The notes under the pieces were generated by a model, which ran no database searches, was not told the origin of the DNA, and saw only the letters and a list, made by a program, of their open reading frames with translations. From IMG/VR virus record IMGVR_UViG_3300035156_000206, positions 124,001 to 188,000 of that record: a stretch of DNA of 64,000 bases; one strand, given 5' to 3'. The translations under genes and the position numbers were made by a program. How positions within the stretch are numbered: position 1 is the stretch's first letter; every line of letters starts with the position of its first letter. Shown one piece after another: positions 6,710 to 57,118 of the stretch.

Positions 6710-7204
6710 TTAGATCACTTGAATAGACAGCGATTCAATGATCGTCGCCCCAACAGAGTCTTCCCCGTTGTCTTGTTGCTCAAATGCCAATCGGCTCATA
6801 TTTTCAGAATCAAACCCTTGTTCATCGAATGCTGTCATATCCCAGCCCATTGAGTGCAAGTTGGCATACGTGAGGATTTCCTCGGACAGATTCATGTCAA
6901 TGAACATCTGCAGTTGTTCCGATATTGCTGTCAGAATGCGACTTGGTGATGCAGCATCGGAGAAGTGCGGATAATCCCATTGGTCCGCATCATACGGTCC
7001 AGTATCCCATCCCACTCCTGGAACAACGAAGAACTTATTCGAGTCAGTGGTCATCTCGATGTAGATCTCGTACCGCTCATTGATCGTTGCCCTTACAGGC
7101 TCGGTGTACACATACTCAAGGATAACCTCGTACACCTTGGTGTGGTACGGCTTTACCACACCAACGTATTCAATCAGACTTGCTAGTGGATCACGTTTAC
7201 TCAT
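6710..7204 (-). CDS. Baseplate-associated structural protein
   Basis: KPYHTK motif and GWDxxxxD repeats; overlaps the end of the giant wedge gene. Confidence 0.6.
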   Translation of the reverse strand: MSKRDPLASLIEYVGVVKPYHTKVYEVILEYVYTEPVRATINERYEIYIEMTTDSNKFFVVPGVGWDTGPYDADQWDYPHFSDAASPSRILTAISEQLQMFIDMNLSEEILTYANLHSMGWDMTAFDEQGFDSENMSRLAFEQQDNGEDSVGATIIESLSIQVI

Positions 7205-18580: not shown

Positions 18581-19921
18581 TCACCGTCTCCAGTGCTTTC
18601 CACGCGGTATGGAAGTTCCACGTTCTGAAGTCCCAACTGCTGGATCATCATATGGAAATTCTGGTTCATGTGTTGTGTCATCCTTTGTCATCACTCGCGC
18701 GAATGGCTCGTGAGATGGTAGACGGTTTGTGAGCTTTGCTTCTTCTGGTGATGCAGATGCTGCAGCCTGTCCATTCATGTGGATCTGTGATCCTGTCTGT
18801 AGAATATTGCCTGACGCTTTCAAACTCAGCGCTGCACCACTTTGCACATTAACAGCAGCCTCTGCTTTAACCTCGAGCCCTGCATCAGTCTTGATGTTGA
18901 TATTGTCAGTTGCTTGGATGCTAACTTCAGCCTTGGACACCATGTGGATACCTTTGTCGGCGTACATACGAATAGTCTCACCAGCTGTGAAGTTGATGTC
19001 TGTCTCAGCACGGACGGATACACGCTTGCCGTACATATCGATGTTGCCATCATAATCCATCTCTACCCAGTTGTCTCCTTTGGGAGTGCTGATGTAGATA
19101 CGCTCATTCGTGTCATCCATCAAGATCTGGGCACCTGAAGTTGTTCGAACACGGACGCGGCAGTTCTCAGGTCTGTCATCCATCGAGAAGCTATGAAAGC
19201 CTGGTGTAGTCCACGAGTACACTGAACTATCATCACCAGCTTCACCATTCTGGTTTACAGCATAGCCATTCTTCACATCAAACGTTTTACCGTCATTTGA
19301 GGTAAATGGTGTTAATTGGGTTTCGTCAGCCTTGTCGCTCGGGGAAGTATCAACGTGCTCAGCCGTATTGCCTGTTGCCGAATAGTCAGCACCACGAGTG
19401 CGCCATTCGTACCCATTGGCATCCTTGAATGCCTTTTGCATATTGCTGTAGAGCGGCTCGATCGGGTCTTCGTACGAATCGAATGGTCCATCGGGTGTAC
19501 CACTTTTGCCTTTGTAGAAGAAGCGACCATGTGGCAGTGAGCTTACGGCACCTTGGTCGAATACACATCCGAGCCACACACGGTAGTAAGGATCTCCATC
19601 GACACAACAAACAAGAACGGTTGCTCCACGCTTGGGGATACCCCACAGCCCATACGCAACCGGTCCTTTTGATGAGAGGCCTACACTAGGACCACGCTTG
19701 AAATCTGAATTGACCATTCCACCAAGTGGTGAGACGTAGGTAGCCCAAGGTAAATTTTCACCTTGTAAGTCATCTGGGTTGTCGCCCAGCGTAGGACACA
19801 GAATCTTCAAACGACCCATCTGATGAGGATCGTTTGTTGCCATCACGGTACCAAGTGTTATGGAATCCATAGTTGTTTGCTTACCAACTTGTGAATTCCT
19901 GTTATTGAACTGTTTACCCAT
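18581..19921 (-). CDS. Baseplate hub/central spike (gp5/VgrG-like, no lysozyme domain)
   Basis: DPHQMGRLKI and LPWA OB-fold motifs; beta-helix repeats toward the C-terminus. Confidence 0.85.
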   Translation of the reverse strand: MGKQFNNRNSQVGKQTTMDSITLGTVMATNDPHQMGRLKILCPTLGDNPDDLQGENLPWATYVSPLGGMVNSDFKRGPSVGLSSKGPVAYGLWGIPKRGATVLVCCVDGDPYYRVWLGCVFDQGAVSSLPHGRFFYKGKSGTPDGPFDSYEDPIEPLYSNMQKAFKDANGYEWRTRGADYSATGNTAEHVDTSPSDKADETQLTPFTSNDGKTFDVKNGYAVNQNGEAGDDSSVYSWTTPGFHSFSMDDRPENCRVRVRTTSGAQILMDDTNERIYISTPKGDNWVEMDYDGNIDMYGKRVSVRAETDINFTAGETIRMYADKGIHMVSKAEVSIQATDNINIKTDAGLEVKAEAAVNVQSGAALSLKASGNILQTGSQIHMNGQAAASASPEEAKLTNRLPSHEPFARVMTKDDTTHEPEFPYDDPAVGTSERGTSIPRGKHWRR

Positions 19922-22411
19922 TTATACTCTCAGGTGGATGAATTTACGTGCTGCAGGGATCGGGTTCAGTGAAGAGTCGATGTTGAAACTACAGTGAACC
20001 CAACTTGCGGAAGCACTAGTCTCACTGATAACTTGTCTAAAGTCAAGGCCTGAACTCTTCAAGGCGTTGAAAATCTTCTCTGGCGATCCGTATGCTGGGC
20101 AGATAAAGTCAACTGCTACGCCTTGCATGTGGTCACTCGTCTTCGAGCTACCTTTGGTTCCAGCGTTGTATGCAGCACAACGGAATCCACTGGTGATGGT
20201 GATGCTGTGACCTAACAGCGACTGCACGTCTTCCAGCTTCTTAGCTAATGCACACAAGTTGTTCATGATGCGATCTGTCAGGTGAGGAATATTCACTTCG
20301 CGACGAATCAGTTGCTCCAACGTGAATGACTTGCTCAAGAAGGTACGACGAGCCGAAGCCATTGTGATTGGTTGCTTACGCACACTCTGACAATTCAGTA
20401 GTTCTTGTGGAGACAGTGGTGTTGAATTTACGCCCATTTTGGCTTTCTGCTCTGCAGTAACGACAGGAGCTGCTTTTGTAGATTTGTCTACCTTTTTCTC
20501 TGCCTTTTGGTTTCCATCCGGTACACCTGAAGGTGATGAGGTAGATGGTTGTGTATCACGACGAGCTGGTGGAGCCCCGGCACCGGTTGGTGTTACCATC
20601 TCTTCCGTTAATATCGTGATCAGGTCTAACTCTTGATCGAACTTGCCGTCACGGAATACACTCTTGATGGAGATGATCTGGAAGAAGCCTGTGTACCAGA
20701 ACTCCTCAGTGAAATCCTTCTGACCAGCAACGAATTCATTATCGCGGGCAGGCATACGCACATTGACCTTGATCAACGGGATCGTTTCCTTCAGTGCTGT
20801 ACCATTTGGGCTGGACACTTCAAGAGCAGTTGGACTAAATGCCTCTAGCAGCCATGGAATACCTACAATGCGCATCTTCGAGTTGATTGCTTCGATTGCT
20901 GCTTGTCGTGCCATAAACGTACGGAAGTCAGCCGTCTTTGCAGGCTCACGTTTGTTACGCGATGCAGGATCTTGAATCGTGCCAGAGTTTCCAACAATCG
21001 AGTACTTACGCATCACGGTGTTGTCTGTATTCAGAATAGTACCAGCTCCGCTACCTAACGTAGTGATATCACCAGAAGCTCCATGGAAATCACCTGGGAA
21101 GTTGTTTGATGATCCGAATGTCTGGAAGAATGCCTGACCGAGCAACATCTTCATATCGTACTCTAGGATCTCGATGTTCGCACCCGTAAAGATGTAGTCG
21201 AACTCAATCACATAACGATGATCCACATTTGGCAAAATCATCTTGCCTTCATTGTTGCGGTTGTCTTTAATGCTGACTGGTACCTTACATGCCTTGACAA
21301 TGTACGTCACAATAGCGGCATCAATGGTGGTGTCAAGCACTGAGTCAATCTTGAAGATTGTCTTGTATCCTTTGTCAACGTCACGGTTCATGATCTCTGT
21401 GACCTTGGTCGTGCTCATTAGCACGTCCGTGATAGCAGACTCAATGTCGATTCCAATTGGCGTTGCCATCTGAGCTTGGCCGCCACCACCTTGGTTACGA
21501 GTGTTGATATTATCGAGTGGCAGGTTAGCGTACTCATCAGCACACGAGATCACATATTTGATCTGACGACCAATTGGGCTATACTTCGAAGGATCATCAC
21601 TTGCACCCTTATTGGTATTGTTGCGTTCATCCAATTGCTTGATCAGTTCCTTGTATGATTTCTCTGCGTTCTCATTCAATGTCGTTTCAAGTGATGTTAA
21701 CGCTTCCTGCACGGTTCCACCCCTAGCATTCGATTGCTCGAGCTTGGCAAATACTGGAAGGCGAGGAGTGCCGTTGATATGGCCTACAAACTCCATCTGA
21801 TACGTTGACCCAGCAGCTGTAAACTCTCCCGTGATGTCCATCATCAGGAATTGGAATGGGCGCGTCTCTAACAATTGTTGGATATGTGGCTCACCGTCGT
21901 GTCCGTCTGTGTAACCCACAAAAATGGTCTTCAACACAAATGTCAGCCCATTTGGTTCAGATTGCAGAGCATCGCATGCGTGCTTCAGCAGGTTCATGAA
22001 GCGGACGCCTTTTGGTTCCATGATCTCCATCATGCCTTCAACGAAGCTGGCGTGAGGATTGCTGCTGCGAGCAGCAGGGTCAATGATGGTCTCAATTTCC
22101 AGTGCCTGGATCACAAACTCAGCATCCGTCATACCATTGATCAACACCATGTATGCATCTTTGCCGTCTGGCACTCCAGGTGGCTTCTTTGGCATGTACT
22201 TGTCTTCATACGATGCGTGCATCCACGTCTCAATGTCGCTCGACTCCATAGCATAGTTTGCAGCAGCCGTTGTGTTAGCTACCACGAGGATGTGATGGTA
22301 TGAGTACGTGCGGAATTGATGCAACAGGTTCAACTCTTTCTCAACATCAATGATGTCCTGAGGAGTCTTACCGTTGAGGATCCGTTGGTCAGAGTTAAAG
22401 ATTCTTGCCAT
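19922..22411 (-). CDS. Baseplate hub protein with C-terminal M15-family peptidase
   Basis: C-terminal ITSGFRC..YN...SxHxxGxAVD...WVH Zn-peptidase motifs; position before gp5. Confidence 0.75.
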   Translation of the reverse strand: MARIFNSDQRILNGKTPQDIIDVEKELNLLHQFRTYSYHHILVVANTTAAANYAMESSDIETWMHASYEDKYMPKKPPGVPDGKDAYMVLINGMTDAEFVIQALEIETIIDPAARSSNPHASFVEGMMEIMEPKGVRFMNLLKHACDALQSEPNGLTFVLKTIFVGYTDGHDGEPHIQQLLETRPFQFLMMDITGEFTAAGSTYQMEFVGHINGTPRLPVFAKLEQSNARGGTVQEALTSLETTLNENAEKSYKELIKQLDERNNTNKGASDDPSKYSPIGRQIKYVISCADEYANLPLDNINTRNQGGGGQAQMATPIGIDIESAITDVLMSTTKVTEIMNRDVDKGYKTIFKIDSVLDTTIDAAIVTYIVKACKVPVSIKDNRNNEGKMILPNVDHRYVIEFDYIFTGANIEILEYDMKMLLGQAFFQTFGSSNNFPGDFHGASGDITTLGSGAGTILNTDNTVMRKYSIVGNSGTIQDPASRNKREPAKTADFRTFMARQAAIEAINSKMRIVGIPWLLEAFSPTALEVSSPNGTALKETIPLIKVNVRMPARDNEFVAGQKDFTEEFWYTGFFQIISIKSVFRDGKFDQELDLITILTEEMVTPTGAGAPPARRDTQPSTSSPSGVPDGNQKAEKKVDKSTKAAPVVTAEQKAKMGVNSTPLSPQELLNCQSVRKQPITMASARRTFLSKSFTLEQLIRREVNIPHLTDRIMNNLCALAKKLEDVQSLLGHSITITSGFRCAAYNAGTKGSSKTSDHMQGVAVDFICPAYGSPEKIFNALKSSGLDFRQVISETSASASWVHCSFNIDSSLNPIPAARKFIHLRV

Positions 22412-36587: not shown

Positions 36588-38282
36588 ATGACAAAATGGA
36601 CTGGCTATTTTAAGGTTGTTCAACCAACAACCGATACAACAACCGTTACCGATAACCAGGCAATGGATGGTACCGAGTATGGAAACTACTCGTGGTATCA
36701 ACGTCTGGTACAAGGTTCGGCATCACGGATCAGCCGCTACAGCGAATATGATGTGATGGATAGCGACGTTGAAGTCGCTCGTGCTTTGGATATCATTGCA
36801 GAGGAGATGACTTCCAACAACGAGAAGACCGACTTGCCAATCAACATCGATGTCCAAGCAGAAGACATCGAACACATGGCTCCAACCACTTTGATGACTC
36901 TCCGTGCCGCTTTGCGCTACTGGAGTTCTGTTCACGACTGGGAAAATCGTCTGTTCAAGATTGCTCGCACTACTGCAAAGTATGGCGACTGCTTCTTCCG
37001 TCGTGGCAAAGATCCTCGTGCTAAGTGGACCTTCATTCATCCGAAGATGGTTGTTGGTGCTGTAGTCGATGAGCAAGATGTTACCAAGATTCTCGCATAC
37101 CAAATCAAAGTCGATATCAACCGTCCTGTGTCAAGCGCTGGACAGATCCCTGTTGGTCAGCAGTATGACAGTGAGATCGTTCCTGCACACGAAATCGTTC
37201 GGTTCTCGCTGAACGATGACATGTCGTCCGTTGCACCTTTCGGTGAATCGATTCTGTCGCCTGTGTATCGTGCACACAAACAAAAAGAGATGCTGGAAGA
37301 CGCGATCATCATTTACCGTACGGTACGTGCTCCTGAACGGCGCGTATTCTACATTGACGTGGGCAAGATGCCACCAGCAATGACCAAGAAGTACCTCGAG
37401 CAAATCAAAAATGAGATTCGGCAGCGTAAGATCCCATCCGCCAATGGTGGACAAACAAACGTCGACTCGGTCTATAATGCCCAATCAATGTCAGAAGACT
37501 TCTACTTCGCACAACGTGCTGACGGTAAAGGTAGTCGTGTAGAGACTCTCCCTGGTGGAGCTGGTCTTGGTGAATTGGCTGACTTGGATCACTTCCTCAA
37601 CAAAGTCTTCCGCGGTCTTCGTATTCCTATCTCTTGGATGAATGAAGCAAACGGTGGTGGTGCAATCTTCAATGATGGCAAGACTGGCCAAGCGTACATC
37701 CAAGAGATTATCTTCGGTAAGTATGTTGCTCGTCTGCAAGGGTACATTGACCGTGTGCTGGATGTTGAATTTAAGAAGTACCTTCGTGACAACCGCATTG
37801 TGGTTGATGAGAGTATGTACAAGCTGCGTTTGCCAGAGTCGACCAACTTTGCAAAGCTGCGCCAAGCTGAAGTAGATGGACAGATGTTGGCTACCTATGC
37901 AAGTGCATCGGAGATCCCACACATGTCGAAGCGTTATGGCTTAGAGCGTTATGCTCAGTGGTCTGAGGATGAGATCCTGGCAAATGAGAAGAAGGTCATG
38001 GAAGAGCGTGGCATCCCAGCTGACGCACCAAACCGCATGCAATTGATCTACGGTGATCCAAATACTACACCAGCGGACTTCTCATTGCCAGGTGGCGGTG
38101 GAGCAATGGGTGGTGGCGGAGCGATGCCTTTAGGTGCTGGTGAAGGTACCGGAGATCCATTAGATCCAGGTGCAGATGCTGACGGCAAAGACACATCGAC
38201 TACTGATTTAGCAGACAAACAAACCACGCGTGATGCGCCGGCTCCTGGCGCAAAACCAGGTGGGGTTGGCGGTAAGCCATAA
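36588..38282 (+). CDS. Portal vertex protein (T4 gp20-like)
   Basis: EDAIIIYRTVRAPERRVFYIDVGKMP, EDFYF, VETLPGG. Confidence 0.95.
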   Translation: MTKWTGYFKVVQPTTDTTTVTDNQAMDGTEYGNYSWYQRLVQGSASRISRYSEYDVMDSDVEVARALDIIAEEMTSNNEKTDLPINIDVQAEDIEHMAPTTLMTLRAALRYWSSVHDWENRLFKIARTTAKYGDCFFRRGKDPRAKWTFIHPKMVVGAVVDEQDVTKILAYQIKVDINRPVSSAGQIPVGQQYDSEIVPAHEIVRFSLNDDMSSVAPFGESILSPVYRAHKQKEMLEDAIIIYRTVRAPERRVFYIDVGKMPPAMTKKYLEQIKNEIRQRKIPSANGGQTNVDSVYNAQSMSEDFYFAQRADGKGSRVETLPGGAGLGELADLDHFLNKVFRGLRIPISWMNEANGGGAIFNDGKTGQAYIQEIIFGKYVARLQGYIDRVLDVEFKKYLRDNRIVVDESMYKLRLPESTNFAKLRQAEVDGQMLATYASASEIPHMSKRYGLERYAQWSEDEILANEKKVMEERGIPADAPNRMQLIYGDPNTTPADFSLPGGGGAMGGGGAMPLGAGEGTGDPLDPGADADGKDTSTTDLADKQTTRDAPAPGAKPGGVGGKP

Positions 38283-38313
38283 ATACTCTAAATCAACATA
38301 AATGGAGTCTGAT

Positions 38314-38964
38314 ATGAATCAACAAATGCTTATCGAAACGTTGGCACCTGGCATGGCAAACATGATCAGTGAGTCAACTCAAGATGGTAAGAATACGTGG
38401 CTTTCAGGCGTCTTCATGCAGGCAGATATTCGTAATCGTAACAATCGAGTCTACCCAATGCGTGAGATCGCTGAAGCGGTCAACAATGCGAATCTCATCA
38501 TTCAAGAGACGAACGGAATCTTCGGAGAGTTGGATCATCCTCAGACGCTGTCTATCAATATGGATCGTGTATCGCATGTGATCACAAGCCTCCGTATGGA
38601 AGGTGCCAACGCAGTCGGCAAGATGAAGATCTTGTGCGGCCAAAATGGTACACCATGTGGTAACATTGCAAAAGCTCTGATCGAGAGTGGCGTCCGCGTT
38701 GGCGTTAGCTCACGTGGTGCTGGTGCAGTGAATGAGAGTGGTGAAGTGAATGGTTTCAATTTTGTGACCATTGATATCGTTGCCACACCTAGTGCACCAG
38801 GTGCGCGTCCTAACTCGTTGATCGAGTCACTGGAAGCAAATGCATCGGGACGCCTGGTTCTGACCCTGGCTGAGCAAATGCAACAAGATGAAGCTGCACA
38901 AAAGTACTTCAAAGCGGAAATCATGCGCTTTGTCAACCTCAACTTATTTGCCAAGAGCAAGTAA
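38314..38964 (+). CDS. Prohead core protease (T4 gp21-like)
   Basis: RNRNNRVYP, GELDHP, GVSSRGAG, DIVATPSAPGA. Confidence 0.95.
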   Translation: MNQQMLIETLAPGMANMISESTQDGKNTWLSGVFMQADIRNRNNRVYPMREIAEAVNNANLIIQETNGIFGELDHPQTLSINMDRVSHVITSLRMEGANAVGKMKILCGQNGTPCGNIAKALIESGVRVGVSSRGAGAVNESGEVNGFNFVTIDIVATPSAPGARPNSLIESLEANASGRLVLTLAEQMQQDEAAQKYFKAEIMRFVNLNLFAKSK

Positions 38965-40489: not shown

Positions 40490-41815
40490 ATGGACTTACA
40501 AACAAAATGGGCAGAAGAAAAAGTTGCCTTGCTGGAAGGCCTGGAAGGCAAACAACGCGAGACCGTTGGACAGGTTCTGGAAAATCAACGCAATTACGTT
40601 CTGAACGAAACAGCAGCTGAAGGTTCGACCTCAGCAAGCAACATCGCTGGTTTCCGTAAGATCATGATTCCAATGATTCGTCGTATTATCCCTGGCACTA
40701 TTGCTCAGGAACTCGTTGGTGTTCAGCCAATGGAAGGCCCAGTTGGCCTGGTTTACTCGCTGCGCTTTAAGTACGCCGAGTCAGTTACTACTTCGACTTC
40801 GCCAAACGGTGACATCGTTGCTGGTGACGAAATCTGGGGTAACGCAAACCCAATCCGTCGTTTCTATTCGAGCGGCACTGGCGTAGCACAAGTTGCTGGC
40901 GCTGGCGGTATGGGTGCACCTGCACCAGGCGCAATCACTGGAACAGCAAACGGTAACGCATGGGGTTCGACCCTGGACGCGGCTGCTGGTTGTACAGTTG
41001 GTGGTGCTGGTTCGTTCCTGGAAGGTTCAGGCGGTCGTAAGTCGAGCTTCGAGATCGTTTCGCAAGCTGTTGAAGCTGGTACGCGTAAGCTGCAAACTGG
41101 TTGGACTATCGAAGCAATGCAAGATGCTAAGAACCAACACGGTATCGACATCGAGTCAGAAATGACCAAAACGATCTCTGCACAAATCGTGCAAGAAATC
41201 GACAACGAAATCATCACGGACTTGACAGCTCTGGCTGGCACCGTAGCAACATGGGACGGTGCTCTGCCATCAGCTCCAGGCTACTACCGTCCAACATTCA
41301 TCGGCGATCGCTTCGCGAACCTCGGTGTGATGATCTCGTACGTTGCGAATGAAATCGCTCGTAAGACCCGTCGTGGTCCAGGTAACTTCATCGTTGTTTC
41401 GCCAATGATGTTGACCGTTCTGCAACAGGCTGTTAAGTCCCAGTTCGCACCAGCAGTTCGTGGTTCGTTCAAAGGCCCTAACAACACCCAATTGGTTGGT
41501 ACCCTCAACGGTACAATCAAGGTCTACAGCTACCTGTGGAACCAAACACAATCGACCGACGTTGGTGGTACAGGCGACGACACGATTCTGGTTGGCTACA
41601 AAGGCGGTGACGGTGAATCGGACGCAGGTTACTTCTACTGCCCATACATCCCACTGATGAGCTCAGGCGTTATCACTAACCCTGTGACCTTCCAGCCAGT
41701 CGTATCGCTGATGACTCGTTACGGTAAGACATACTTTACCAACCCAACGACTTCGCTCGGCAACTCGGCTGACTACTACGGTAAGATCAACGTCACTAAC
41801 CTGTCGTTCGCTTAA
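40490..41815 (+). CDS. Major capsid protein (T4 gp23-like)
   Basis: IRRIIPGTIAQELVGVQPM, RKLQTGWTIEAMQD, EIDNEII, GYFYCPYIPL, MTRYG. Confidence 0.97.
   Translation: MDLQTKWAEEKVALLEGLEGKQRETVGQVLENQRNYVLNETAAEGSTSASNIAGFRKIMIPMIRRIIPGTIAQELVGVQPMEGPVGLVYSLRFKYAESVTTSTSPNGDIVAGDEIWGNANPIRRFYSSGTGVAQVAGAGGMGAPAPGAITGTANGNAWGSTLDAAAGCTVGGAGSFLEGSGGRKSSFEIVSQAVEAGTRKLQTGWTIEAMQDAKNQHGIDIESEMTKTISAQIVQEIDNEIITDLTALAGTVATWDGALPSAPGYYRPTFIGDRFANLGVMISYVANEIARKTRRGPGNFIVVSPMMLTVLQQAVKSQFAPAVRGSFKGPNNTQLVGTLNGTIKVYSYLWNQTQSTDVGGTGDDTILVGYKGGDGESDAGYFYCPYIPLMSSGVITNPVTFQPVVSLMTRYGKTYFTNPTTSLGNSADYYGKINVTNLSFA

Positions 41816-42163: not shown

Positions 42164-42179
<16 letters not shown>
41961..42179 (+). 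CDS. Small virion-associated hypothetical protein
   Basis: CATAAATA late promoter; AAGGAG RBS; YD-like [11 protein letters not shown] end. Confidence 0.65.
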
Positions 42180-43233
<1,054 letters not shown>

Positions 43234-43234
<1 letters not shown>

Positions 43235-44022: not shown

Positions 44023-44055
44023 AGCCCTCTTCGGAGGGCTTTTTATTGTCTGGTG
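44023..44055 (+). terminator. Terminator; right copy of the direct repeat
   Basis: agccctc-TTCG-gagggc-T5-attgtctggtg. Confidence 0.85.
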
Positions 44056-44106
44056 TTTTTGAGAGACTTGATGTACAATCAAACATTGTCTCCACTCTAC
44101 ACAGAT

Positions 44107-44541
44107 ATGACACCAGTTGACCAACAATTTATGAAAGTGCCTGAGATAGGACAAGCAGGCGATTGTGCAAGAGCAGCGATAGCAACCCTGCTAGATCTTC
44201 CTTTAATCGATGTTCCCCACTTTCTCCAAGAAGTATTGGATGGCAAGACGAGCGAAAAAGGATCCCTTGGATTCTACGGCTATATTGATGATTGGCTTGA
44301 GGATCGTGGCTACATTATGCAATGGCAACACAATCCAATATACCACCCAGTGGGCACGTACTGCTACATTAGTGGACCAAGTCCAAATATTGTAGGTGGG
44401 TGGCATGCTTGTGTTGGGCAAATACAAGAGGATCGCACAATCAAACTATTGCACGATCCTCACCCGCTTAAGAAAGGCTTGTTAGAGCCTGAACGCTGGA
44501 AGTTTAGCTTTTTGGTGAAACATCGTCGATCAGTGTCTTGA
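44107..44541 (+). CDS. Hypothetical protein, possibly papain-like (Cys-His-Asp)
   Basis: Q...GDCARAAIA, WHACV, HDPHP. Confidence 0.5.
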   Translation: MTPVDQQFMKVPEIGQAGDCARAAIATLLDLPLIDVPHFLQEVLDGKTSEKGSLGFYGYIDDWLEDRGYIMQWQHNPIYHPVGTYCYISGPSPNIVGGWHACVGQIQEDRTIKLLHDPHPLKKGLLEPERWKFSFLVKHRRSVS

Positions 44542-45538
44542 TGCTTGGCCGGCTATACGGCACGTGGGGCTTCTTCCCATCAAACTGTTCGTAGATGTAG
44601 TGGGTGAACTGGCTTTGCAGCTGTCCATCCACCATACGGGCACCAAAGGCGCCGTACACAGCTTTGAACTTACGGCCAGTCTCGGCATTCTCGTAAGGCA
44701 CCACTGCGATTGAGGACATGAAGTTCTCCAGCTTGCGCAGACTTGGCTTTTCGTAGAACAGCTCGGTGATCCAACCATTGATCTCGATTTCACCACCACT
44801 GCCGATGTTCTTCTGGGTGAAAATCCCCTTCCAGAATGTGGAATCGTGGAACACAAAGGAGGTGAGTATCTGATCCAGTACACCATGCACAACACGCATG
44901 TAACCAGCAGCACCTGTCAAACCAACTGAGTCAAACAGCTTGGCAATGCCATCCGCACTATTCACCAGGCTGTCCCAGTCAGCAACGGTGCCGCCTACTT
45001 CGACTTCTGGGATACCACAACAGAAGGTCATGTAGTTGTAGTACGCCTGTACACCGTCAAGCAATGCAGCACATAGCGCAAGCCTGGATTCTTTTGTCAG
45101 TGTCGACAGCTCAGGCACAAACATTGCTTGGTCCGTAGGCATAAGACTGGTCAGCTGATCCATCACCGAATCGAGATCCATTTGTGTTGGGTCAGTTGTA
45201 GGCACCATGATGGTGACCTTATCATCAGACCGGGTGAACAGTGGACGGCAGGCTTCCGTGTTGGCCTTGATGATCTTGGCAACCTCACACATCACAATGA
45301 ACCAGAGATCCTGAGGGAGGATCAACATCTTCTGGTGGGTTGAGTACGCGGTGCTCAATGTACCCACGAAGCCAAGTGCTGGATACACATCGGCTTCTTC
45401 TGGTGGCATTGCTGTCACCAGCTTGAAGTGATTCTGCTCGGTGTTGAGCTTCACTTCGAGGCTGCTGACGATCTGCAACACTTCCTTCCTGCGACGGATT
45501 GGTGTTGCTTCGAGACTTGCATCGATTACTACTTTCAT
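44504..45538 (-). CDS. DUF4419-like protein
   Basis: AYSTHQKMLILPQDLW, CGIPEVEVGGTVADW, FW...GSGG..INGWIT. Confidence 0.7.
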   Translation of the reverse strand: MKVVIDASLEATPIRRRKEVLQIVSSLEVKLNTEQNHFKLVTAMPPEEADVYPALGFVGTLSTAYSTHQKMLILPQDLWFIVMCEVAKIIKANTEACRPLFTRSDDKVTIMVPTTDPTQMDLDSVMDQLTSLMPTDQAMFVPELSTLTKESRLALCAALLDGVQAYYNYMTFCCGIPEVEVGGTVADWDSLVNSADGIAKLFDSVGLTGAAGYMRVVHGVLDQILTSFVFHDSTFWKGIFTQKNIGSGGEIEINGWITELFYEKPSLRKLENFMSSIAVVPYENAETGRKFKAVYGAFGARMVDGQLQSQFTHYIYEQFDGKKPHVPYSRPSIKTLIDDVSPKS

Positions 45539-45546
45539 GTATGTTC

Positions 45547-45858
45547 CTAACGGTCGTTTACGAATTTGTGGAGACGCTTCTTGGCTTTTGCAGCCTTGAT
45601 CCCTTTCCAACGTTTCACTTCTTTATCTGCCAATCCACTCTTGATCATGTTCTTGATGCCCCACAGACCATAATAGTTCAATGCATCTAACATGGCTTGT
45701 GCAAGACTCTCACCGCCAGGGTTCTTTCGTGCATTTCTTCCAAGGAAGATAATGTACTCCCGCAGCTCGTAAGGAATGCAAAACTTGAGCATCCCCTCGT
45801 GCATGGCCGTGCGGGAGGCATCGATACCTCCCGTAAGCTTAAACTCGATCGTGTTCAT
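45547..45858 (-). CDS. Hypothetical basic protein
   Basis: TAATG coupling to the radical SAM gene. Confidence 0.65.
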   Translation of the reverse strand: MNTIEFKLTGGIDASRTAMHEGMLKFCIPYELREYIIFLGRNARKNPGGESLAQAMLDALNYYGLWGIKNMIKSGLADKEVKRWKGIKAAKAKKRLHKFVNDR

Positions 45859-46787
45859 TACAGTTCGCGTGGAGCGTGTACGATAGGGATGGAACGGCCG
45901 ATGCTTGGCTTAGCCAGTTCAGGATGTTGACGCATCCAGTCTTGGACGAACCAGAGCTGGCCGCAACCGCCGCCGATATCATCTTGACCTGCAGGATCGA
46001 AACAGCGAGTGGAGTAGCCGTAACCATTCAGCAGACTCATGAAGTCTTCGGCCAGCTGACGTTGGCGGATGTTCGCGGCCGCAACAGCTTCATCACGCTC
46101 ACACACGACCGAGATTGTCGCCTGCCATACACCTGGATTGAACAAACGATAGATGCGAGCAGCATCTTCTGGTGACGTATTGTCCGCGTGTGCGCAGTAG
46201 TTGAAGAATGGCATGCGTCCGGTGGCTGCAAACCACTTCTCGCCTTCTTGGCTGATTTCGTACAGATCAAGCTTGGCCTTGAACGGCACCAGCTTGTCAC
46301 GCGCTTCGTCAGTGCTCTCATGAACACTGAACTGGAGGCCGATGTTGGGGAATTCAACCGAGAGGTTGCGAATGGCTTCGTAGTCTGCCTTTGGTGCCGA
46401 TGTGCTAATCAGCAAAGCAAACCGTGGGTACTTCTCGCTGAGCATGCGAATGGCCCCGGACAGTCCCTTGATGTTGAGCAATGGCTCACCCATCGACATG
46501 AACATGATTTGGCACCGTTCGACTTTTTCAGGATCGATATTGCGATCCGCAAACAGGTGGTCAACCTGTGCAACGATCTCTTCAGCGGTCAGTGACCGGA
46601 CAAAGGAGTCGCCGGCGCCACAGAAGCGGCAACCAACTGGACAGCCACTTTGGGTGGAGCAGCAGATCACCGTGCGTGCTTCGTAGGTGGGATATTTGTA
46701 CAGTACTGCTTCAGCAACGGCATTGCCAAAGTCGAACACATACTTGCTGACATTCTCGTCAGTTGAATCAACGCGCTTGACGTCCAT
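45858..46787 (-). CDS. RlmN/Cfr-family radical SAM methyltransferase-like protein lacking the N-terminal domain
   Basis: ICCSTQSGCPVGCRFC, MSMGEP, QFSVH, DIGGGCGQL. Confidence 0.85.
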   Translation of the reverse strand: MDVKRVDSTDENVSKYVFDFGNAVAEAVLYKYPTYEARTVICCSTQSGCPVGCRFCGAGDSFVRSLTAEEIVAQVDHLFADRNIDPEKVERCQIMFMSMGEPLLNIKGLSGAIRMLSEKYPRFALLISTSAPKADYEAIRNLSVEFPNIGLQFSVHESTDEARDKLVPFKAKLDLYEISQEGEKWFAATGRMPFFNYCAHADNTSPEDAARIYRLFNPGVWQATISVVCERDEAVAAANIRQRQLAEDFMSLLNGYGYSTRCFDPAGQDDIGGGCGQLWFVQDWMRQHPELAKPSIGRSIPIVHAPREL

Positions 46788-46817
46788 TTTAGTTACCCTT
46801 CAGTTGAAAGAAAGTTA

Positions 46818-46846
46818 ACTATACTGGGTAACTAAAATATTGTCAA
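46818..46846 (-). promoter_or_regulatory. Sigma70-type promoter for the radical SAM operon
   Basis: TTGACA-17 bp-TATAGT on the minus strand. Confidence 0.75.
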
Positions 46847-46849
46847 CTG

Positions 46850-47017
46850 TTACTCCTTATAATAGCAAAACCATTTACCAAACACCCAGTAGCAGTGTTG
46901 CTCCTTGGACATATCATTAGTATTACCACATCCTGCCCATTTGCAACGAGCAATGCCAGTATTATATCCTGCAGAGGATCTTTTCTGGCACTTGGTGCAG
47001 AACCAATAGTACATCAT
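46850..47017 (-). CDS. 55-aa Cys/aromatic-rich protein (absent from the ORF track)
   Basis: MMYYWFCTKCQKRSSAGYNTGIARCKWAGCGNTNDMSKEQHCYWVFGKWFCYYKE; ATGA overlap with the upstream gene. Confidence 0.55.
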   Translation of the reverse strand: MMYYWFCTKCQKRSSAGYNTGIARCKWAGCGNTNDMSKEQHCYWVFGKWFCYYKE

Positions 47018-47352
47018 AATGCACAGGTACCAGCCACAGGATAGTATTTGCCCCGGCGACTTTGAACAATGCGTACGTTGGTCCTAACTGGCACTTTCGG
47101 CTTCTCCTGGTGATAAGGGATGACAGAGTCTTGCATTGTCAGTTTCATTAAGTTGGATTTCCACACGTACAGCCTCTGTCCCTCGACTGAGATATTGTAG
47201 CCGGCCTCATTCTGATTGTTGAAGTACGCAATACACAGTTTAAGCGGACGCAGTTCACCACTCACTTTAATGCTGTATAACTGCTTGTCCTCAGTATTCC
47301 AAAAGTATCCCGGATACTTGATAGCTACAAACGGTGGCGGCAGTGTAATCAT
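47014..47352 (-). CDS. Hypothetical protein
   Basis: ATGA overlaps at both ends. Confidence 0.65.
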   Translation of the reverse strand: MITLPPPFVAIKYPGYFWNTEDKQLYSIKVSGELRPLKLCIAYFNNQNEAGYNISVEGQRLYVWKSNLMKLTMQDSVIPYHQEKPKVPVRTNVRIVQSRRGKYYPVAGTCAL

Positions 47353-47771
47353 GGCAGGATCCCCAGCATAGCTAATTGCATTTTCAGACGTGTATAATCA
47401 GCCCACACTTTCTTTGGTAAGTCTTCTACCTCTTTTCCAGACATCGCGTCGTACTTAGCAGTCAGAGTCTTGTACAGTTCGATGGTAGGAGCGTACTCTT
47501 TGGTCCGCTCAGCTATTCTGTCCTCTGGTGATACCATCGGAGCGAGCTCGACTGTTGTAGTGACGGTGTAGACGGCTACCTGAGCCATCTTATAATCTTC
47601 GCTGTTGCGGGCTAAGTCGTCACATGCTGCTATTGCAGCTTCGCGGCTCTTGAATGATTTGCCTAGGCATGCTTTAGTTGGATCTTGGGTAAAGCGTTGT
47701 TGCTCCCAGACTGCACCATCATATACATAGCCAAATGGCGGAATGAATATGCCATAACGTACTTGTTTCAT
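47349..47771 (-). CDS. Hypothetical early protein
   Basis: AGGAGG RBS; TTGACA-16 bp-TATGAT promoter at about 47797-47824. Confidence 0.7.
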   Translation of the reverse strand: MKQVRYGIFIPPFGYVYDGAVWEQQRFTQDPTKACLGKSFKSREAAIAACDDLARNSEDYKMAQVAVYTVTTTVELAPMVSPEDRIAERTKEYAPTIELYKTLTAKYDAMSGKEVEDLPKKVWADYTRLKMQLAMLGILP

Positions 47772-47888
47772 GTCACCCTCCTGATTAGATTCGATAATCA
47801 TACAAGGGTCTAGGAATATGTCAACAACTCGTTGTAAATTATTCAGATTTCTGTACAATGCAAAGCATGTCTCTTTAACGGATAAAAT

Positions 47889-48086
47889 ATGGCACACGAC
47901 CACGAACACACAGAACACTATCACACAGACGAAAAGGGTGTACTCGTCAAGTGCTACCACCAATGCAAGGCACTCCTTGCGATGCCATCATTTTGGATTG
48001 GGTCAACAATCAGCTTTCCGCTGGAGCACTTTATCTGGGAAAAACTTCCTGGGTTTAGCCATCTAGCCCATTGGATGGGGATGTAA
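47889..48086 (+). CDS. Small His-rich putative membrane protein
   Basis: MAHDHEHTEHYH followed by a hydrophobic segment; TAATG coupling. Confidence 0.55.
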   Translation: MAHDHEHTEHYHTDEKGVLVKCYHQCKALLAMPSFWIGSTISFPLEHFIWEKLPGFSHLAHWMGM

Positions 48087-55030: not shown

Positions 55031-57118
55031 ATGGCAAATTTGGTTTCACCAGGCGTATCTGTTACGGTCACTGACGAGTCGTTCTACGTCCCGGCCTCCG
55101 CCCCAACAGTACCACTGATCTTCATTGCCACAGCAGACGAAAAATTACAACCGAATGGCATTACTCCTGCCGCGGGTACGTTCGAATCTAATGTGGTTCG
55201 CACGATCACCTCGCTTCAGCAAAGCACCCAGATGTATGGTATCCCAGTTTTCAAAGAAGACTACACAGGGAAGCCATTGCACGGTGACGCACGTAATGAA
55301 CAAGGTCTGTTAACGCTGAACAAGTTCCTCGGACTTGGTAGCTCAGCCTTCGTTGTTCGTGCCAATGTCAACTTGAATGATGACACAGAAGATGTAGCGG
55401 GTAAGTGGGCTGACAAAATGCAGACTGCAAGCTTCGTGCTGCAGAACTACATCACTTCGTTCCTGGACGAATATAACACATTGAATGGTTACACGCCTTT
55501 TAGCTCAAGCTATAAGACAACTGTGACTCAGTCGGAGTTAGTGTACTTGACTAACAAGGCAACTGCCGAACTGTTCGCACTGTACACATTCAAGAACGCT
55601 AAGGCGGACTTTTTTGACAACAACCTGGGCAATGAAGTAAGCACAGCCGGTAGTCAAGCAGTAAGCTTCGGTGGTAGTATCACTGACGGTACAGCTGCAA
55701 CTGGTCTGGCAGCACAAGTTTACACTGCTACGGTACGTGTAGATGGCGTGAACAAGGCAATCTCGATTAGTGGTTCTGTAGCAACAACGTACAATGCTCT
55801 GATTACAGAAATCAACAACGACCTGGGTCTGTCGGCTACTGCTGTTCTGGCTGATGGGAATATCAAGATCACGAGCGAGACTGTTGGTTCAGCTTCGAAA
55901 GTTCTGATCACTGACACTGACCTGTTTGCTTCGGTCGAAGGTTTTGTTTCACTGTATCTGCCAACAGATGGTTCATTAGCAGATGCCCCACTGCCAGTAT
56001 TTGGTAATGGTTTCAGTCAGCCACCAACCGGTTCGTACTTAGGTTTCGAAGGTATGGCTATGGAATGGGTTGATACTCACCCAACGGATTCTGGTGTTTC
56101 GGAATTCACGGCAGAAGATGCTGCTGAGCTCCTGCTGGATGCTGCTGATGAGTACTCACTGACTGTCGAGTTCCTGAACAAGACAAGCTTGGGTGCAAAC
56201 GATGCTGCTCGTCGTGTTTCGATCGTAACAGCCCTGGCTGCATTGATCAACAGTAACACAGATGTACGTTCGGAGCGTTTCGAGTACAACCTGATCATGT
56301 GCCCTGGCTTCCCAGAAGTCGTTGACGAGATGGTTGCCCTGGCACAAGAGATCGGTGAAGAAGCATTCGTAGTTGCTGACATGCCAATGCTGTTAAGCCC
56401 AGAAGCTGCTGCAACTTGGGGTACTTCGTCTGACCGTGTTCGCGGTACAAACGTTGCGTACTACTACCCAGGTGCTTTGACTTCGAACCTGGACGGTAAG
56501 GATGTGTATTCGTCATCAGTGGCTGTTGCGCTGCGTACGATCACAAACAGCGACAACGTGAGCAAGATTCACTTTGCTCCAGCTGGTCCACGTCGTGGTC
56601 TGGTTACTGGTTTCTCGAAAATGGGTTACCTGACTGGCACACCTGGAACACCAACCACATTCATCGAGACAAACCTGAATGTTGGACAACGTAACAATCT
56701 GTACCAGTACACAAACAACATCAACCCAATTACCGAGATCCCAGGTCGCGGCATTATGGTGATGGGTCAGAAAACATCGGCTGTTGCTGCATCTGCCATG
56801 GACCGTATCAATGTTGTTCGTATGTTGGCTGATCTGCGTCGTAGCCTGCGCAAGACTGCATTCTCGTACCTGTTCGAACCTAACGATCAAATCACTCGTG
56901 ATAATCTGAAGTCGGCAGTTGATGGTGTTCTGTCTAACCTGATGGTTGAGCGTGGCCTGTACGATTACGTCACCGTGTGTGACGCGTCTAACAACGATGG
57001 TGTTCGCATCGACCGTAACGAGCTGTATATCGATATCGCGCTGAAGCCTGTGCGTGCAGTCGAATTCATCTACGTGCCGATCCGTGTGTTGAGCACTGGC
57101 GCTACATTAGCAAATTAA
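55031..57118 (+). CDS. Tail sheath protein (T4 gp18-like)
   Basis: LVSPGVSVTVTDES, FAPAGPRRG, GQKT, DRINVVR, LFEPND, IDRNELYIDI..KP.RAVEFIY. Confidence 0.97.
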   Translation: MANLVSPGVSVTVTDESFYVPASAPTVPLIFIATADEKLQPNGITPAAGTFESNVVRTITSLQQSTQMYGIPVFKEDYTGKPLHGDARNEQGLLTLNKFLGLGSSAFVVRANVNLNDDTEDVAGKWADKMQTASFVLQNYITSFLDEYNTLNGYTPFSSSYKTTVTQSELVYLTNKATAELFALYTFKNAKADFFDNNLGNEVSTAGSQAVSFGGSITDGTAATGLAAQVYTATVRVDGVNKAISISGSVATTYNALITEINNDLGLSATAVLADGNIKITSETVGSASKVLITDTDLFASVEGFVSLYLPTDGSLADAPLPVFGNGFSQPPTGSYLGFEGMAMEWVDTHPTDSGVSEFTAEDAAELLLDAADEYSLTVEFLNKTSLGANDAARRVSIVTALAALINSNTDVRSERFEYNLIMCPGFPEVVDEMVALAQEIGEEAFVVADMPMLLSPEAAATWGTSSDRVRGTNVAYYYPGALTSNLDGKDVYSSSVAVALRTITNSDNVSKIHFAPAGPRRGLVTGFSKMGYLTGTPGTPTTFIETNLNVGQRNNLYQYTNNINPITEIPGRGIMVMGQKTSAVAASAMDRINVVRMLADLRRSLRKTAFSYLFEPNDQITRDNLKSAVDGVLSNLMVERGLYDYVTVCDASNNDGVRIDRNELYIDIALKPVRAVEFIYVPIRVLSTGATLAN

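What the first reader, a model, noticed from the sequence alone, without database searches (positions are those of the whole stretch)
44504..46846. Early operon: RlmN/Cfr-like radical SAM enzyme, small basic protein and DUF4419 protein
Seen: the protein has CxxxCxxC, MSMGEP and both extra catalytic cysteines of the RlmN/Cfr mechanism (ICCSTQSGC; GGGCGQL), but lacks the N-terminal accessory domain. It is coupled to a 103-aa basic ORF and a DUF4419-like gene under a TTGACA-17-TATAGT promoter. Established: RlmN makes m2A in 23S rRNA and at tRNA position 37, and Cfr makes m8A2503. Inference: a phage RNA C-methylation module, for example shielding tRNAs from anticodon nucleases or retuning ribosomes. 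The basic protein could replace the missing RNA-binding domain.
Basis: partly seen in the sequence, partly recalled or inferred. Interest (0 to 1): 0.65.

Follow-up and report, generated by a model that had tools for sequence, protein, structure and literature searches.

The report
Phage RlmN-like methylase linked to NAD
A jumbo phage carries a shortened but catalytically complete relative of the RNA methylases RlmN and Cfr; elsewhere this gene keeps company with NAD+ salvage genes, not with the two genes beside it here, which points to an undescribed job in the phage-host fight over NAD+.

Summary
On the minus strand lie a 309-aa RlmN/Cfr-type radical SAM gene (45858-46787), a 103-aa basic ORF (45547-45858, TAATG overlap) and a DUF4419 gene (44504-45538). 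They sit behind a TTGACA-17-TATAGT promoter, inside the T4-like head module of a 292-kb biocrust phage.

All five catalytic cysteines are present and the roughly 80-residue N-terminal domain is absent. The enzyme belongs to a deep third clade, about 300 aa long, outside both RlmN and Cfr.

The three-gene module is not supported. The small ORF and DUF4419 join the enzyme in only one sister phage, in scrambled order, and each occurs alone elsewhere.

The recurrent partner is NAD+ salvage. In 29 of 122 loci, across phages and five or more bacterial phyla, the enzyme lies in or beside NAMPT, NMNAT/Nudix, PncA, PncB, NadD, NadE, Prs or NrtR genes. One relative is fused to a Nudix domain next to NAMPT-NMNAT, and another to an HD triphosphohydrolase-like domain. 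Of 43 viral records carrying the enzyme, 17 also encode NAMPT, as does this phage 107 kb away.

My best reading is a stand-alone class A C-methylase that works with NAD+ reconstitution, probably on an adenine nucleotide and not on folded RNA. The substrate is untested. No paper in the searched library reports this link.

The parts
46818..46846 (-). sigma-70-like promoter TTGACA-17-TATAGT, 31 nt upstream of the radical SAM start codon
   Evidence: It resembles the phage's repeated promoter TTGACAttTTTCCAAAAGTCAGTATAAT.
45858..46787 (-). 309-aa short RlmN/Cfr-like class A radical SAM methyl synthase: C42, C49/C53/C56, MSMGEP, C275; no N-terminal domain
45547..45858 (-). 103-aa basic ORF (pI 9.95) with a lysine/arginine-rich C-terminus; start overlaps the radical SAM stop (TAATG); lineage-restricted orphan
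44504..45538 (-). 344-aa DUF4419 (PF14388) protein; ATG 8 nt after the small ORF's stop; fold without a PDB match
44428..44461 (-). 14-bp-stem hairpin 43 nt after the DUF4419 stop; a weak terminator candidate that lies inside the convergent + strand ORF 44053-44541
46850..47963 (-). Upstream same-strand genes of the island (55-aa Cys-rich, 112-aa, 204-aa ORFs) with their own TTGACA-16-TATGAT promoter at 47824..47797. The 112-aa ORF is shared with the sister phage. Read-through into the radical SAM gene is possible.

Best explanation
The 309-aa gene encodes a self-sufficient, horizontally mobile member of a deep, N-terminally truncated third clade of the RlmN/Cfr (class A) radical SAM methyl synthases. 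It is transcribed from its own sigma-70-like promoter within a small accessory island in the head-gene module.

Chemistry (inferred from conserved residues):
- One SAM methylates Cys275.
- A second SAM is cleaved at the Cys49/53/56 [4Fe-4S] cluster to give a 5'-deoxyadenosyl radical.
- That radical abstracts H from methyl-Cys275, and the resulting methylene radical adds to an sp2 carbon of an aromatic base, by analogy adenine C2 or C8.
- Cys42 resolves the adduct.

Biological role (inferred from gene context and fusions): an accessory of NAD+ salvage and reconstitution. I think it acts on an adenine nucleotide of the NAD+/ADP-ribose pool, or on another free nucleotide, alongside Nudix, NAMPT and NMNAT during the conflict over NAD+. 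I do not think it acts as a housekeeping rRNA/tRNA methylase.

The 103-aa ORF and the DUF4419 gene are co-transcribed neighbours specific to this phage lineage. They are not conserved partners, and their functions remain unknown.
For: Identity
- All 44 aligned clade members keep the residues matching E. coli RlmN E105, C118, C125/129/132, MxMGEP and C355-G-Q.
- The AF2 model has pLDDT 88 and matches RlmN at TM 0.70-0.73, including the tRNA complex 5hr7.

Separate clade
- RlmN and Cfr lie together on the far side of a 100* branch from 44 (and later 103) short sequences.
- Scores are far below the RlmN and Cfr cut-offs.
- There are 78 clusters (50% identity) at E<=1e-30, nearly all about 300 aa or shorter (some fragments, a few longer fusions); full-length RlmN-like hits appear only from about 1e-29 downwards.

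NAD link
- The top recurrent neighbour clusters over 122 loci are Nudix/NrtR (18), NadE (12), NAMPT (11), PncA (9), NadD/NMNAT (8), Prs (7) and PncB (10). Together they occur in 29 loci, and in at least 17 an NAD gene is directly adjacent.
- The enzyme lies between NMNAT and NAMPT in L034 and L040. L102 reads NrtR-PncA-PncB-NadE-rSAM.
- The NAD-linked label needs 17 changes on the tree, at least 9 of them forced, so the link recurs independently.
- 17 of 43 viral records with the enzyme also encode PF04095 (6 of 16 records at least 90% complete; 12 of 18 records of 100 kb or more). NARP2 is found in about 1.1% of phages (preprint 10.1101/2024.02.11.579819).
- This phage has NAMPT and NMNAT at C1:60197-63832.

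Fusions
- P0186 is the enzyme fused to NUDIX, followed on its contig by NAMPT and NMNAT.
- P0261 is the enzyme fused to HD plus HD_assoc.
- Both keep all the cysteines.

Not a replacement for RlmN
- 4 of 5 cellular genomes with the short enzyme also have a canonical RlmN above the cut-off.
- The clade is acidic, median pI 5.8 against 6.6-9.1 for RlmN/Cfr. RlmN's basic C-terminal tail is replaced by a conserved CGQLWFVQDWM.

No module.
Against: - No biochemical evidence exists for any substrate. Every characterised class A enzyme methylates RNA (review PMC9692996).
- In this window the enzyme is not next to NAD genes; they lie 107 kb away. About three quarters of all loci show no NAD gene within 5 kb, and six complete small phages or prophages carry the enzyme without NAMPT.
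- tRNA genes lie within 5 kb in roughly 18 loci, and this phage encodes 29 tRNAs, including A37 species that are RlmN substrates in E. coli.
- One Saccharibacteria genome has only the short enzyme and no canonical RlmN, which would fit an RNA role there.
- Large phages carry NAD genes more often than average, so the genome-level enrichment is partly a size effect.
- A slow enzyme that spends two SAM per turnover is ill suited to modifying a millimolar metabolite pool.
Confidence: 0.5

Rival explanations
1. A stand-alone RNA C-methylase. The truncated enzyme still methylates adenine C2 or C8 in tRNA (A37 of host or phage tRNAs) or in 23S rRNA A2503, retuning translation or shielding tRNAs. Its proximity to NAD genes would reflect shared regulation or clustering of accessory genes.
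For: - The only characterised relatives are RNA methylases.
- The catalytic residues are intact.
- tRNA genes are nearby in ANB28-like phages and about 18 loci.
- The phage encodes A37 tRNAs Arg, Asp, His, Gln and Glu.
- The very high cross-phylum conservation (45-88% identity) fits a universal target.
- One Saccharibacteria genome lacks a canonical RlmN.
Against: - The N-terminal helical domain and the basic C-tail are missing, and the pI is acidic.
- The enzyme coexists with canonical RlmN in 4 of 5 genomes.
- It sits in NAD salvage operons of both the NAMPT and the PncA/PncB type across phyla.
- It is found fused to Nudix and HD nucleotide hydrolase domains and not to RNA-binding domains.
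Confidence: 0.3
2. One reading: a three-gene phage RNA methylation module in which the 103-aa basic protein supplies the missing RNA-binding domain and DUF4419 is a further subunit.
For: - The genes are tightly packed on one strand, with a TAATG overlap and an 8-nt gap.
- They share one promoter.
- The small protein is basic, pI 9.95.
- All three genes are present in the sister phage L005.
Against: - The trio is found in 1 of 122 other loci, and in permuted order there.
- The small ORF's third known copy lies without the enzyme or DUF4419.
- DUF4419 occurs alone in other jumbo phages.
- Divergence rates differ sharply: 88% against 57% and 47% identity.
- Most homologues of the enzyme stand alone or sit beside unrelated small ORFs.
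Confidence: 0.05
3. A Cfr-like ribosome modifier. It would make m8A2503, or a similar mark, so that infected-cell ribosomes resist peptidyl-transferase-centre inhibitors or ribosome-targeting defence toxins.
For: Homology to Cfr at E 2e-16 and about 29% identity to plasmid cfr.
Against: - The protein scores higher with the RlmN model than with the Cfr models, and far below the Cfr cut-offs: 76 against 530-550 bits.
- It lies outside the Cfr clade.
- A2503 is modified on naked 23S rRNA before subunit assembly (review PMC13602947).
- The arguments about the missing domain and the NAD context apply here too.
Confidence: 0.05
4. A DNA adenine C-methylase that protects phage DNA from restriction.
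For: - In a Duganella prophage the gene sits in the early recombination and nin-like region, where orphan DNA methylases are common.
- DNA methylase genes are neighbours in 5 loci.
Against: - To my knowledge there is no precedent for C2- or C8-methyladenine in DNA.
- No conserved partner genes for DNA modification were found.
- The enzyme is chromosomal in NAD operons of bacteria.
- The slow chemistry is unsuited to genome-wide marking.
Confidence: 0.03

Closest known systems
RlmN (23S rRNA m2A2503 / tRNA m2A37 methyl synthase; PDB 3rfa, 5hr7, 6fz6)
   Same: It has the same radical SAM core fold (TM 0.70-0.73). It has the same CxxxCxxC cluster motif, the two mechanistic cysteines (C118 and C355 equivalents), E105 and an MxMGEP motif. 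These features predict the same ping-pong methyl synthase chemistry.
   Different: It lacks the roughly 80-residue N-terminal helical domain and the basic C-terminal tail. It has MSMGEP where RlmN has MGMGEP, and SV(V/I)CERDE where RlmN has IPWNP. It is acidic. It scores 99 bits against the 290-bit cut-off and branches outside RlmN. It coexists with canonical RlmN in cellular genomes, and its gene context is NAD salvage where rlmN sits between ndk and rodZ or pilW.
Cfr (23S rRNA m8A2503 methyl synthase, resistance determinant; PDB 9p0p)
   Same: It belongs to the same class A family, with the same catalytic residues, at about 29% identity.
   Different: It is not in the Cfr clade and scores 76 bits against the 530-550-bit cut-offs. 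It has no N-terminal domain. It is carried by phages and NAD operons, not by resistance plasmids.
NARP2 (phage NAD+ reconstitution pathway 2: NAMPT plus NMNAT/Nudix; Osterman et al. 2024; KVP40 NadV/NatV)
   Same: The enzyme is repeatedly encoded inside or beside NAMPT-NMNAT/Nudix cassettes. It lies between the two genes in L034 and L040, and is fused to the Nudix domain in L149. Its own phage and the cultured Salmonella phage Arash both encode NARP2-type genes.
   Different: NARP2 as described has two genes and no radical SAM component. In this window the enzyme lies 107 kb from the NAD genes. It also accompanies the PncA/PncB/NadD/NadE route in bacteria.
Viperin-like radical SAM enzymes (act on free NTPs)
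   Same: They are a precedent, from my own knowledge, for a radical SAM enzyme that acts on free nucleotides in virus-host conflict. They are the next-best structural matches after RlmN and Cfr.
   Different: The chemistry differs (dehydration against methyl synthase). Viperins lack the two mechanistic cysteines. The structural similarity is only the generic radical SAM barrel (TM about 0.5).

Membership tests
Class A radical SAM methyl synthases (RlmN/Cfr family) | CxxxCxxC motif ligating the radical SAM [4Fe-4S] cluster | tested here: met
   C49-x3-C53-x2-C56 align with E. coli RlmN C125/C129/C132 and are conserved in 44 of 44 clade members. Pfam Radical_SAM gives E 5e-9.
Class A radical SAM methyl synthases (RlmN/Cfr family) | Two additional conserved cysteines, the methyl carrier and the resolving cysteine (E. 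coli C355 and C118) | tested here: met
   C275 (GGGCGQL) and C42 (ICCSTQSGC) align with C355 and C118. They are invariant in the clade and in the Nudix and HD fusions. The definition is taken from review PMC9692996.
Class A radical SAM methyl synthases (RlmN/Cfr family) | RlmN-type core fold | tested here: met
   The AF2 model (pLDDT 88.4) matches 6fz6 at TM 0.73, 5hr7 at 0.72 and Cfr 9p0p at 0.61, with E 1e-18 to 1e-11. Other radical SAM folds reach only E>=1e-5.
Class A radical SAM methyl synthases (RlmN/Cfr family) | Methylation of an sp2 carbon of adenosine (C2 or C8) | not testable with these tools
   This needs anaerobic reconstitution and LC-MS.
RlmN proper (TIGR00048 equivalog) | Score above the curated cut-off, and the N-terminal helical (RNA-binding) domain | tested here: not met
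   98.8 bits against a cut-off of 290; the match covers model positions 73-342 only. Residue 1 aligns with RlmN residue about 80. The protein lies outside the RlmN group in the trees.
Cfr (NF000424 / TIGR04432) | Score above the curated cut-off, and placement in the Cfr clade | tested here: not met
   75-77 bits against cut-offs of 530-550. Cfr and Cfr(D) group apart at 99* support.
NARP2-type phage NAD+ reconstitution cassette | NAMPT and NMNAT encoded by the same phage | tested here: met
   tblastn finds NAMPT at C1:62288-63832 (36% identity, E 2e-81) and NMNAT/Nudix at C1:60197-61378 (E 2e-67) in the window's genome.
NARP2-type phage NAD+ reconstitution cassette | The radical SAM gene is physically part of the cassette in this phage | tested here: not met
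   The enzyme is at C1:169861-170787, 107 kb away. Adjacency is seen in other phages only.
NARP2-type phage NAD+ reconstitution cassette | Restores NAD+ and counters NAD+-depleting defence | not testable with these tools
   This needs infection assays and NAD+ measurements.
DUF4419 (PF14388) | Pfam score above the gathering threshold | tested here: met
   124.6 bits against 25, E 7e-36, residues 56-264. 39 phage or metagenome homologues were found.
Conserved three-gene module (rSAM + 103-aa ORF + DUF4419) | Co-occurrence of the three genes across independent genomes | tested here: not met
   Only the sister phage L005 has all three, and in a different order. The other 120 loci show no match to the small ORF or to DUF4419 at E<=0.01 or 1e-4. 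Each of the two genes also occurs alone elsewhere.

The most novel reading that the evidence does not exclude
The short RlmN-like clade would be the first class A radical SAM methyl synthase that works on a free nucleotide, namely the adenine (or pyridinium) ring of NAD+, ADP-ribose, a cyclic ADPR signal or a related molecule. It would form a previously unrecognised third component of phage NAD+ reconstitution (NARP2-like) cassettes and of bacterial NrtR-type NAD salvage operons. In that role it would make or destroy a C-methylated NAD-family nucleotide in the conflict with NAD+-depleting immunity.
Probability: 0.3. Interest if true: 0.9.

Novelty: new variant of a known kind. Interest (0 to 1): 0.72.

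Why it matters
RlmN and Cfr are the only characterised class A radical SAM methylases, and both act on RNA. Here a large, strongly conserved and widely transferred sister clade has lost the RNA-binding domain. It has 78 clusters at 50% identity and is found in phages of many hosts and in at least five bacterial phyla.

This clade is wired into NAD+ salvage by operon position, by genome-level co-occurrence and by domain fusion. NAD+ depletion is a major antiphage strategy, and NAD+ reconstitution is a recently discovered counter-strategy. An extra, chemically unusual enzyme riding with those pathways could point to an unknown NAD-derived metabolite, an unknown way of evading NADases or their signals, or a link between NAD+ status and RNA modification.

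The question is directly testable, because a cultured Salmonella phage (Arash) carries both the enzyme and NARP2-type genes.

The finding also warns against annotation transfer. These genes are labelled '23S rRNA (adenine2503-C2)-methyltransferase' in databases on weak grounds.

Tried and rejected
- Complex prediction of the enzyme with the 103-aa protein gave no answer (ipSAE 0.00). I do not count it for or against binding.
- ESM Atlas look-ups for DUF4419 and the small ORF gave no usable hits.
- The DUF4419 AF2 model (pLDDT 80, pTM 0.78) has no Foldseek match at E<=0.001. VIA-align matches only a generic helical hairpin at Z<=8.8. A profile search against PDB gave a short, probably spurious cytochrome c hit. 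The function of DUF4419 stays open.
- PHROGs gave only families of unknown function.
- Megablast against GenBank phages found no close genome.
- Sequencing-run search found two biocrust DNA metagenomes and no RNA run, so expression could not be checked and read laying was not used.
- Literature searches found no report of this clade: RlmN + phage, DUF4419, NARP2, NrtR + radical SAM, NAMPT + radical SAM + Nudix, and the Iyer et al. 2022 NAD-virus survey. The nrtX/nrtY genes of Rodionov et al. 2008 are undefined there and could not be matched.
- Small ORFs that follow the enzyme in other phages (ANB28 94 aa, Duganella prophage 77 aa and others) share no similarity with the 103-aa ORF.
- The N-terminal extensions of P0164, P0165 and P0170 have no Pfam domain and may be gene-call artefacts.
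Full report
**Where the window lies.** The window is bases 124001-188000 of a 291,967-bp IMG/VR virus record with estimated completeness 84%. The only sequencing runs that hold the region are biocrust metagenomes. The phage is a T4-like jumbo myovirus. Around the finding lie a portal gene (36588-38282), a prohead protease (38302-38964), a Gp23 capsid gene (40490-41815), a collagen-repeat protein (42164-43234) and a tail sheath gene (55031-57118). The genome also encodes 29 tRNAs and a tmRNA-like gene outside the window.

**Observation.** A run of minus-strand genes (44504-47963) interrupts the plus-strand head module. It contains:
- a 309-aa radical SAM ORF at 45858-46787;
- a 103-aa ORF at 45547-45858, whose ATG overlaps the preceding stop as TAATG;
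- a DUF4419 ORF that starts at the ATG at 45538, 8 nt after the small ORF's stop. That start is supported by the invariant M1 in 39 homologues.

The promoter TTGACA-17-TATAGT is at 46846..46818. Such strong sites are enriched in the window, 9 observed against 2.3 expected. This one shares its extended -10 region with a promoter repeated about ten times at 2-18 kb of the genome, which gives moderate support to the label 'early'. A hairpin at 44461..44428 follows DUF4419, but it has a poor T-run and lies inside a convergent ORF.

**What the enzyme is.** The protein matches NCBIfam RlmN (E 3e-28) and Cfr models (about 1e-21), but at 77-99 bits against cut-offs of 290-633. It matches PDB RlmN and Cfr sequences at E 5e-18 to 9e-14.

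In a MAFFT alignment with E. coli RlmN, S. aureus Cfr, Cfr(D) and four other RlmNs, all 44 members of its clade keep the positions matching E105, C118, C125/129/132, MxMGEP and C355-G-Q. Residue 1 aligns with RlmN residue about 80, so the N-terminal helical domain is absent. RlmN's basic C-terminal tail is replaced by a conserved CGQLWFVQDWM segment. The clade is acidic, median pI 5.8 against 6.6-9.1.

An AF2 model (pLDDT 88.4, pTM 0.89) matches RlmN structures at TM 0.70-0.73 and Cfr at 0.61. Other radical SAM enzymes follow only at E 1e-5. By the published definition of class A methylases, one radical SAM domain plus two conserved cysteines acting on sp2 carbons (PMC9692996), the protein qualifies.

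In trees, RlmN and Cfr sit together on the far side of a fully supported long branch from the short sequences. The protein is therefore neither an RlmN nor a Cfr but a third lineage.

**How widespread the clade is.** A word search found 5,504 relatives. More than 120 clusters lie at 75-88% identity, and all are about 310 aa. The exhaustive search found 78 clusters (50% identity) at E<=1e-30, many further short relatives at 28-40% identity, and full-length RlmN-like proteins only below that.

GenBank phages with the enzyme include Stenotrophomonas ANB28 and BUCTxx99 (73%), Xanthomonas JGB6, Salmonella Arash (54%), several Vibrio phages (51%) and an Aeromonas phage.

Only 82 matches were found among 185,579 species genomes. 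They span Proteobacteria, Actinomycetota, Saccharibacteria, Bacteroidota, Bacillota, Planctomycetota, Fusobacteriota and some archaeal MAGs.

**The three-gene module fails.**
- tblastn with the small ORF and with DUF4419 against all fetched loci finds them next to the enzyme only in one sister jumbo phage, L005. There the enzyme is 88% identical, the small ORF 57% and DUF4419 47%, and the order is DUF4419 - small - rSAM on one strand.
- The small ORF has just two relatives in 5.8 billion proteins. The second, on a 303-kb contig, has neither partner within 6 kb.
- DUF4419 has 39 phage-type relatives, and the two contexts I inspected lack the enzyme.
- GenBank phages carrying DUF4419 are different records from those carrying the enzyme.
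- Small ORFs that follow the enzyme in other phages are unrelated to the 103-aa ORF.
- The complex test gave no answer.

**What the enzyme does travel with.** I clustered the predicted neighbours within 5 kb over 122 non-redundant loci. Apart from artefactual antisense ORFs, the most recurrent clusters are all NAD+ genes:
- Nudix, NrtR or NMNAT-Nudix: 18 loci
- glutamine-dependent NAD synthetase NadE: 12
- NAMPT: 11
- isochorismatase-type PncA: 9
- NadD/NMNAT: 8
- PRPP synthetase: 7
- NAPRTase PncB: 10

The next unrelated clusters reach only 4-5 loci.

Twenty-nine loci have at least one of these genes, and in at least 17 an NAD gene is directly adjacent. Examples:
- NMNAT-rSAM-NAMPT (L034, L040)
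- NMNAT-NAMPT-rSAM (L016, L018)
- rSAM-Prs-NAMPT (L082)
- NrtR-PncA-PncB-NadE-rSAM (L102)
- PncB-rSAM-NadE (L114)
- PncA-rSAM-Nudix (L087)
- in three Saccharibacteria, pncB-pncA divergent from the rSAM gene, with nrtR-nadE beside it.

The cellular examples are flanked by housekeeping genes (MetRS, TatD, FtsH, AcrB), so they are chromosomal and not prophage. On the family tree the NAD-linked state needs 17 changes, at least 9 of them forced, so it is not one inherited arrangement.

At genome level, 17 of 43 viral records with the enzyme also encode a PF04095 protein. That is 6 of 16 near-complete records and 12 of 18 records of 100 kb or more, against 0 of 6 complete small ones. NARP2 is reported in about 1.1% of phages. 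The window's own phage has NAMPT and NMNAT/Nudix at C1:60197-63832. Cultured Salmonella phage Arash has them 13-16 kb from its copy of the enzyme.

**Fusions.** Among the longer relatives, P0186 (42% identity) is the enzyme fused to a C-terminal Nudix domain. Its contig reads Nudix ... [rSAM-Nudix] - NAMPT - stand-alone NMNAT. The Nudix domain that NARP2 usually fuses to NMNAT is here fused to the radical SAM enzyme. P0261 (36%) is fused to an HD plus HD_assoc domain of the dNTP triphosphohydrolase type. Both keep all five cysteines. Both fused domains belong to families that mostly hydrolyse free nucleotides.

**Relation to canonical RlmN.** Four of five cellular genomes with the short enzyme also have a canonical RlmN above the cut-off. 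One Saccharibacteria genome has only the short form. Canonical rlmN genes sit next to ndk, rodZ or pilW and not next to NAD genes.

**Interpretation.** Three things are shown: the enzyme is a complete class A methyl synthase of a separate, truncated clade; it is an independent mobile gene; and its recurrent genomic partner is NAD+ salvage, not the two local neighbours.

The rest is inferred. Because it lacks the RNA-binding parts, is acidic, coexists with RlmN, and is linked and fused to nucleotide-handling enzymes, I think it more likely acts on an adenine nucleotide of the NAD+/ADP-ribose family, or at least serves NAD+ reconstitution, than that it duplicates RlmN on rRNA or tRNA. I hold this at about 0.5.

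A stand-alone RNA methylase remains a serious rival at about 0.3. All known relatives act on RNA, tRNA genes are sometimes nearby, and three quarters of the loci, this window included, show no NAD gene close by. A slow, SAM-hungry enzyme also cannot plausibly remodel a millimolar NAD+ pool, so a low-abundance target such as a signal, a cap or a damaged or special nucleotide would be needed.

No paper in the searchable library mentions a radical SAM or RlmN-like gene with NARP, NrtR or phage NAD metabolism.

**DUF4419 and the small ORF.** The DUF4419 model is fairly confident but has no recognisable fold match. Its invariant residues (Y65, H68, W79, C174-G175, G246-S-G-G, G255-W256) suggest an enzyme or a ligand binder, but nothing more can be said. 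The small ORF is a lineage-restricted orphan with a basic tail. Both are best described as co-transcribed accessory genes of this phage lineage.

**Verdict.** The result is a new variant of a known enzyme kind, with an unreported and testable link to NAD+ metabolism.

Noticed in passing
G000:C1:2021-17745 (outside the window): A near-identical sigma-70-like promoter, TTGACAttTTTCCAAAAGTCAGTATAAT, is repeated about 10 times on the minus strand. It probably marks the phage's early region. The genome holds 42 TTGACA-N16-18-TANNNT sites in all.
   Followed up: partly
G000:C1:2477-9044 and 258286-271723 (outside the window): 29 tRNA genes lie in two clusters, together with a tmRNA-like gene (tag ANDSQFKVAAYA) and one tRNA-like gene with a 2-base anticodon call. 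The Arg(ACG), Asp, His, Gln and Glu tRNAs all carry A37.
   Followed up: partly
G000:C1:60197-63832 (outside the window): The phage encodes NARP2-type NAMPT and NMNAT/Nudix genes.
   Followed up: partly
window 7197-14963 (-) and 15047-18142 (-): Giant ORFs of 2588 and 1031 aa have no Pfam family. They lie next to baseplate-spike-like (18581-19921) and Peptidase_M15-containing (19922-22411) proteins and are presumably virion or tail components.
   Followed up: no
window 42164-43234 (+): A 356-aa protein has a long collagen-like G-x-y repeat ([10 protein letters not shown]...) directly after the major capsid gene. It may be a head fibre or decoration protein.
   Followed up: no
window 44053-44541 (+): A 162-aa ORF (phrog_5845, unknown function) converges on DUF4419 and overlaps it by 38 nt. 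The terminator-like hairpin lies inside this ORF.
   Followed up: no
window 46850-47017 (-): A 55-aa Cys-rich ORF (CxxC ... CxxxxC) just upstream of the radical SAM promoter looks like a zinc ribbon. It has no family hit.
   Followed up: no
L123:643-1704, L114:7824-8525: In some Bacillota-type loci a second, different radical SAM gene lies next to the short RlmN-like gene. In L123 the RlmN-like protein carries a 250-aa C-terminal extension with no Pfam hit.
   Followed up: partly
L100 (Woesearchaeota MAG contig), L127/L139: These NAD clusters around the enzyme also hold NadA, an ADP-ribosylglycohydrolase, CinA/PncC-like genes and a PTS_EIIC_2-family membrane protein that may be a niacin-related transporter.
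   Followed up: no
L002 (Stenotrophomonas phage ANB28) and H2/H3: Database annotations of the same gene disagree. It is called 'ribosomal RNA large subunit methyltransferase N' in ANB28, but 'prohibitin family protein' lies under the match in BUCTxx99 and JGB6. A Band7/SPFH gene is a neighbour in 4 loci.
   Followed up: no
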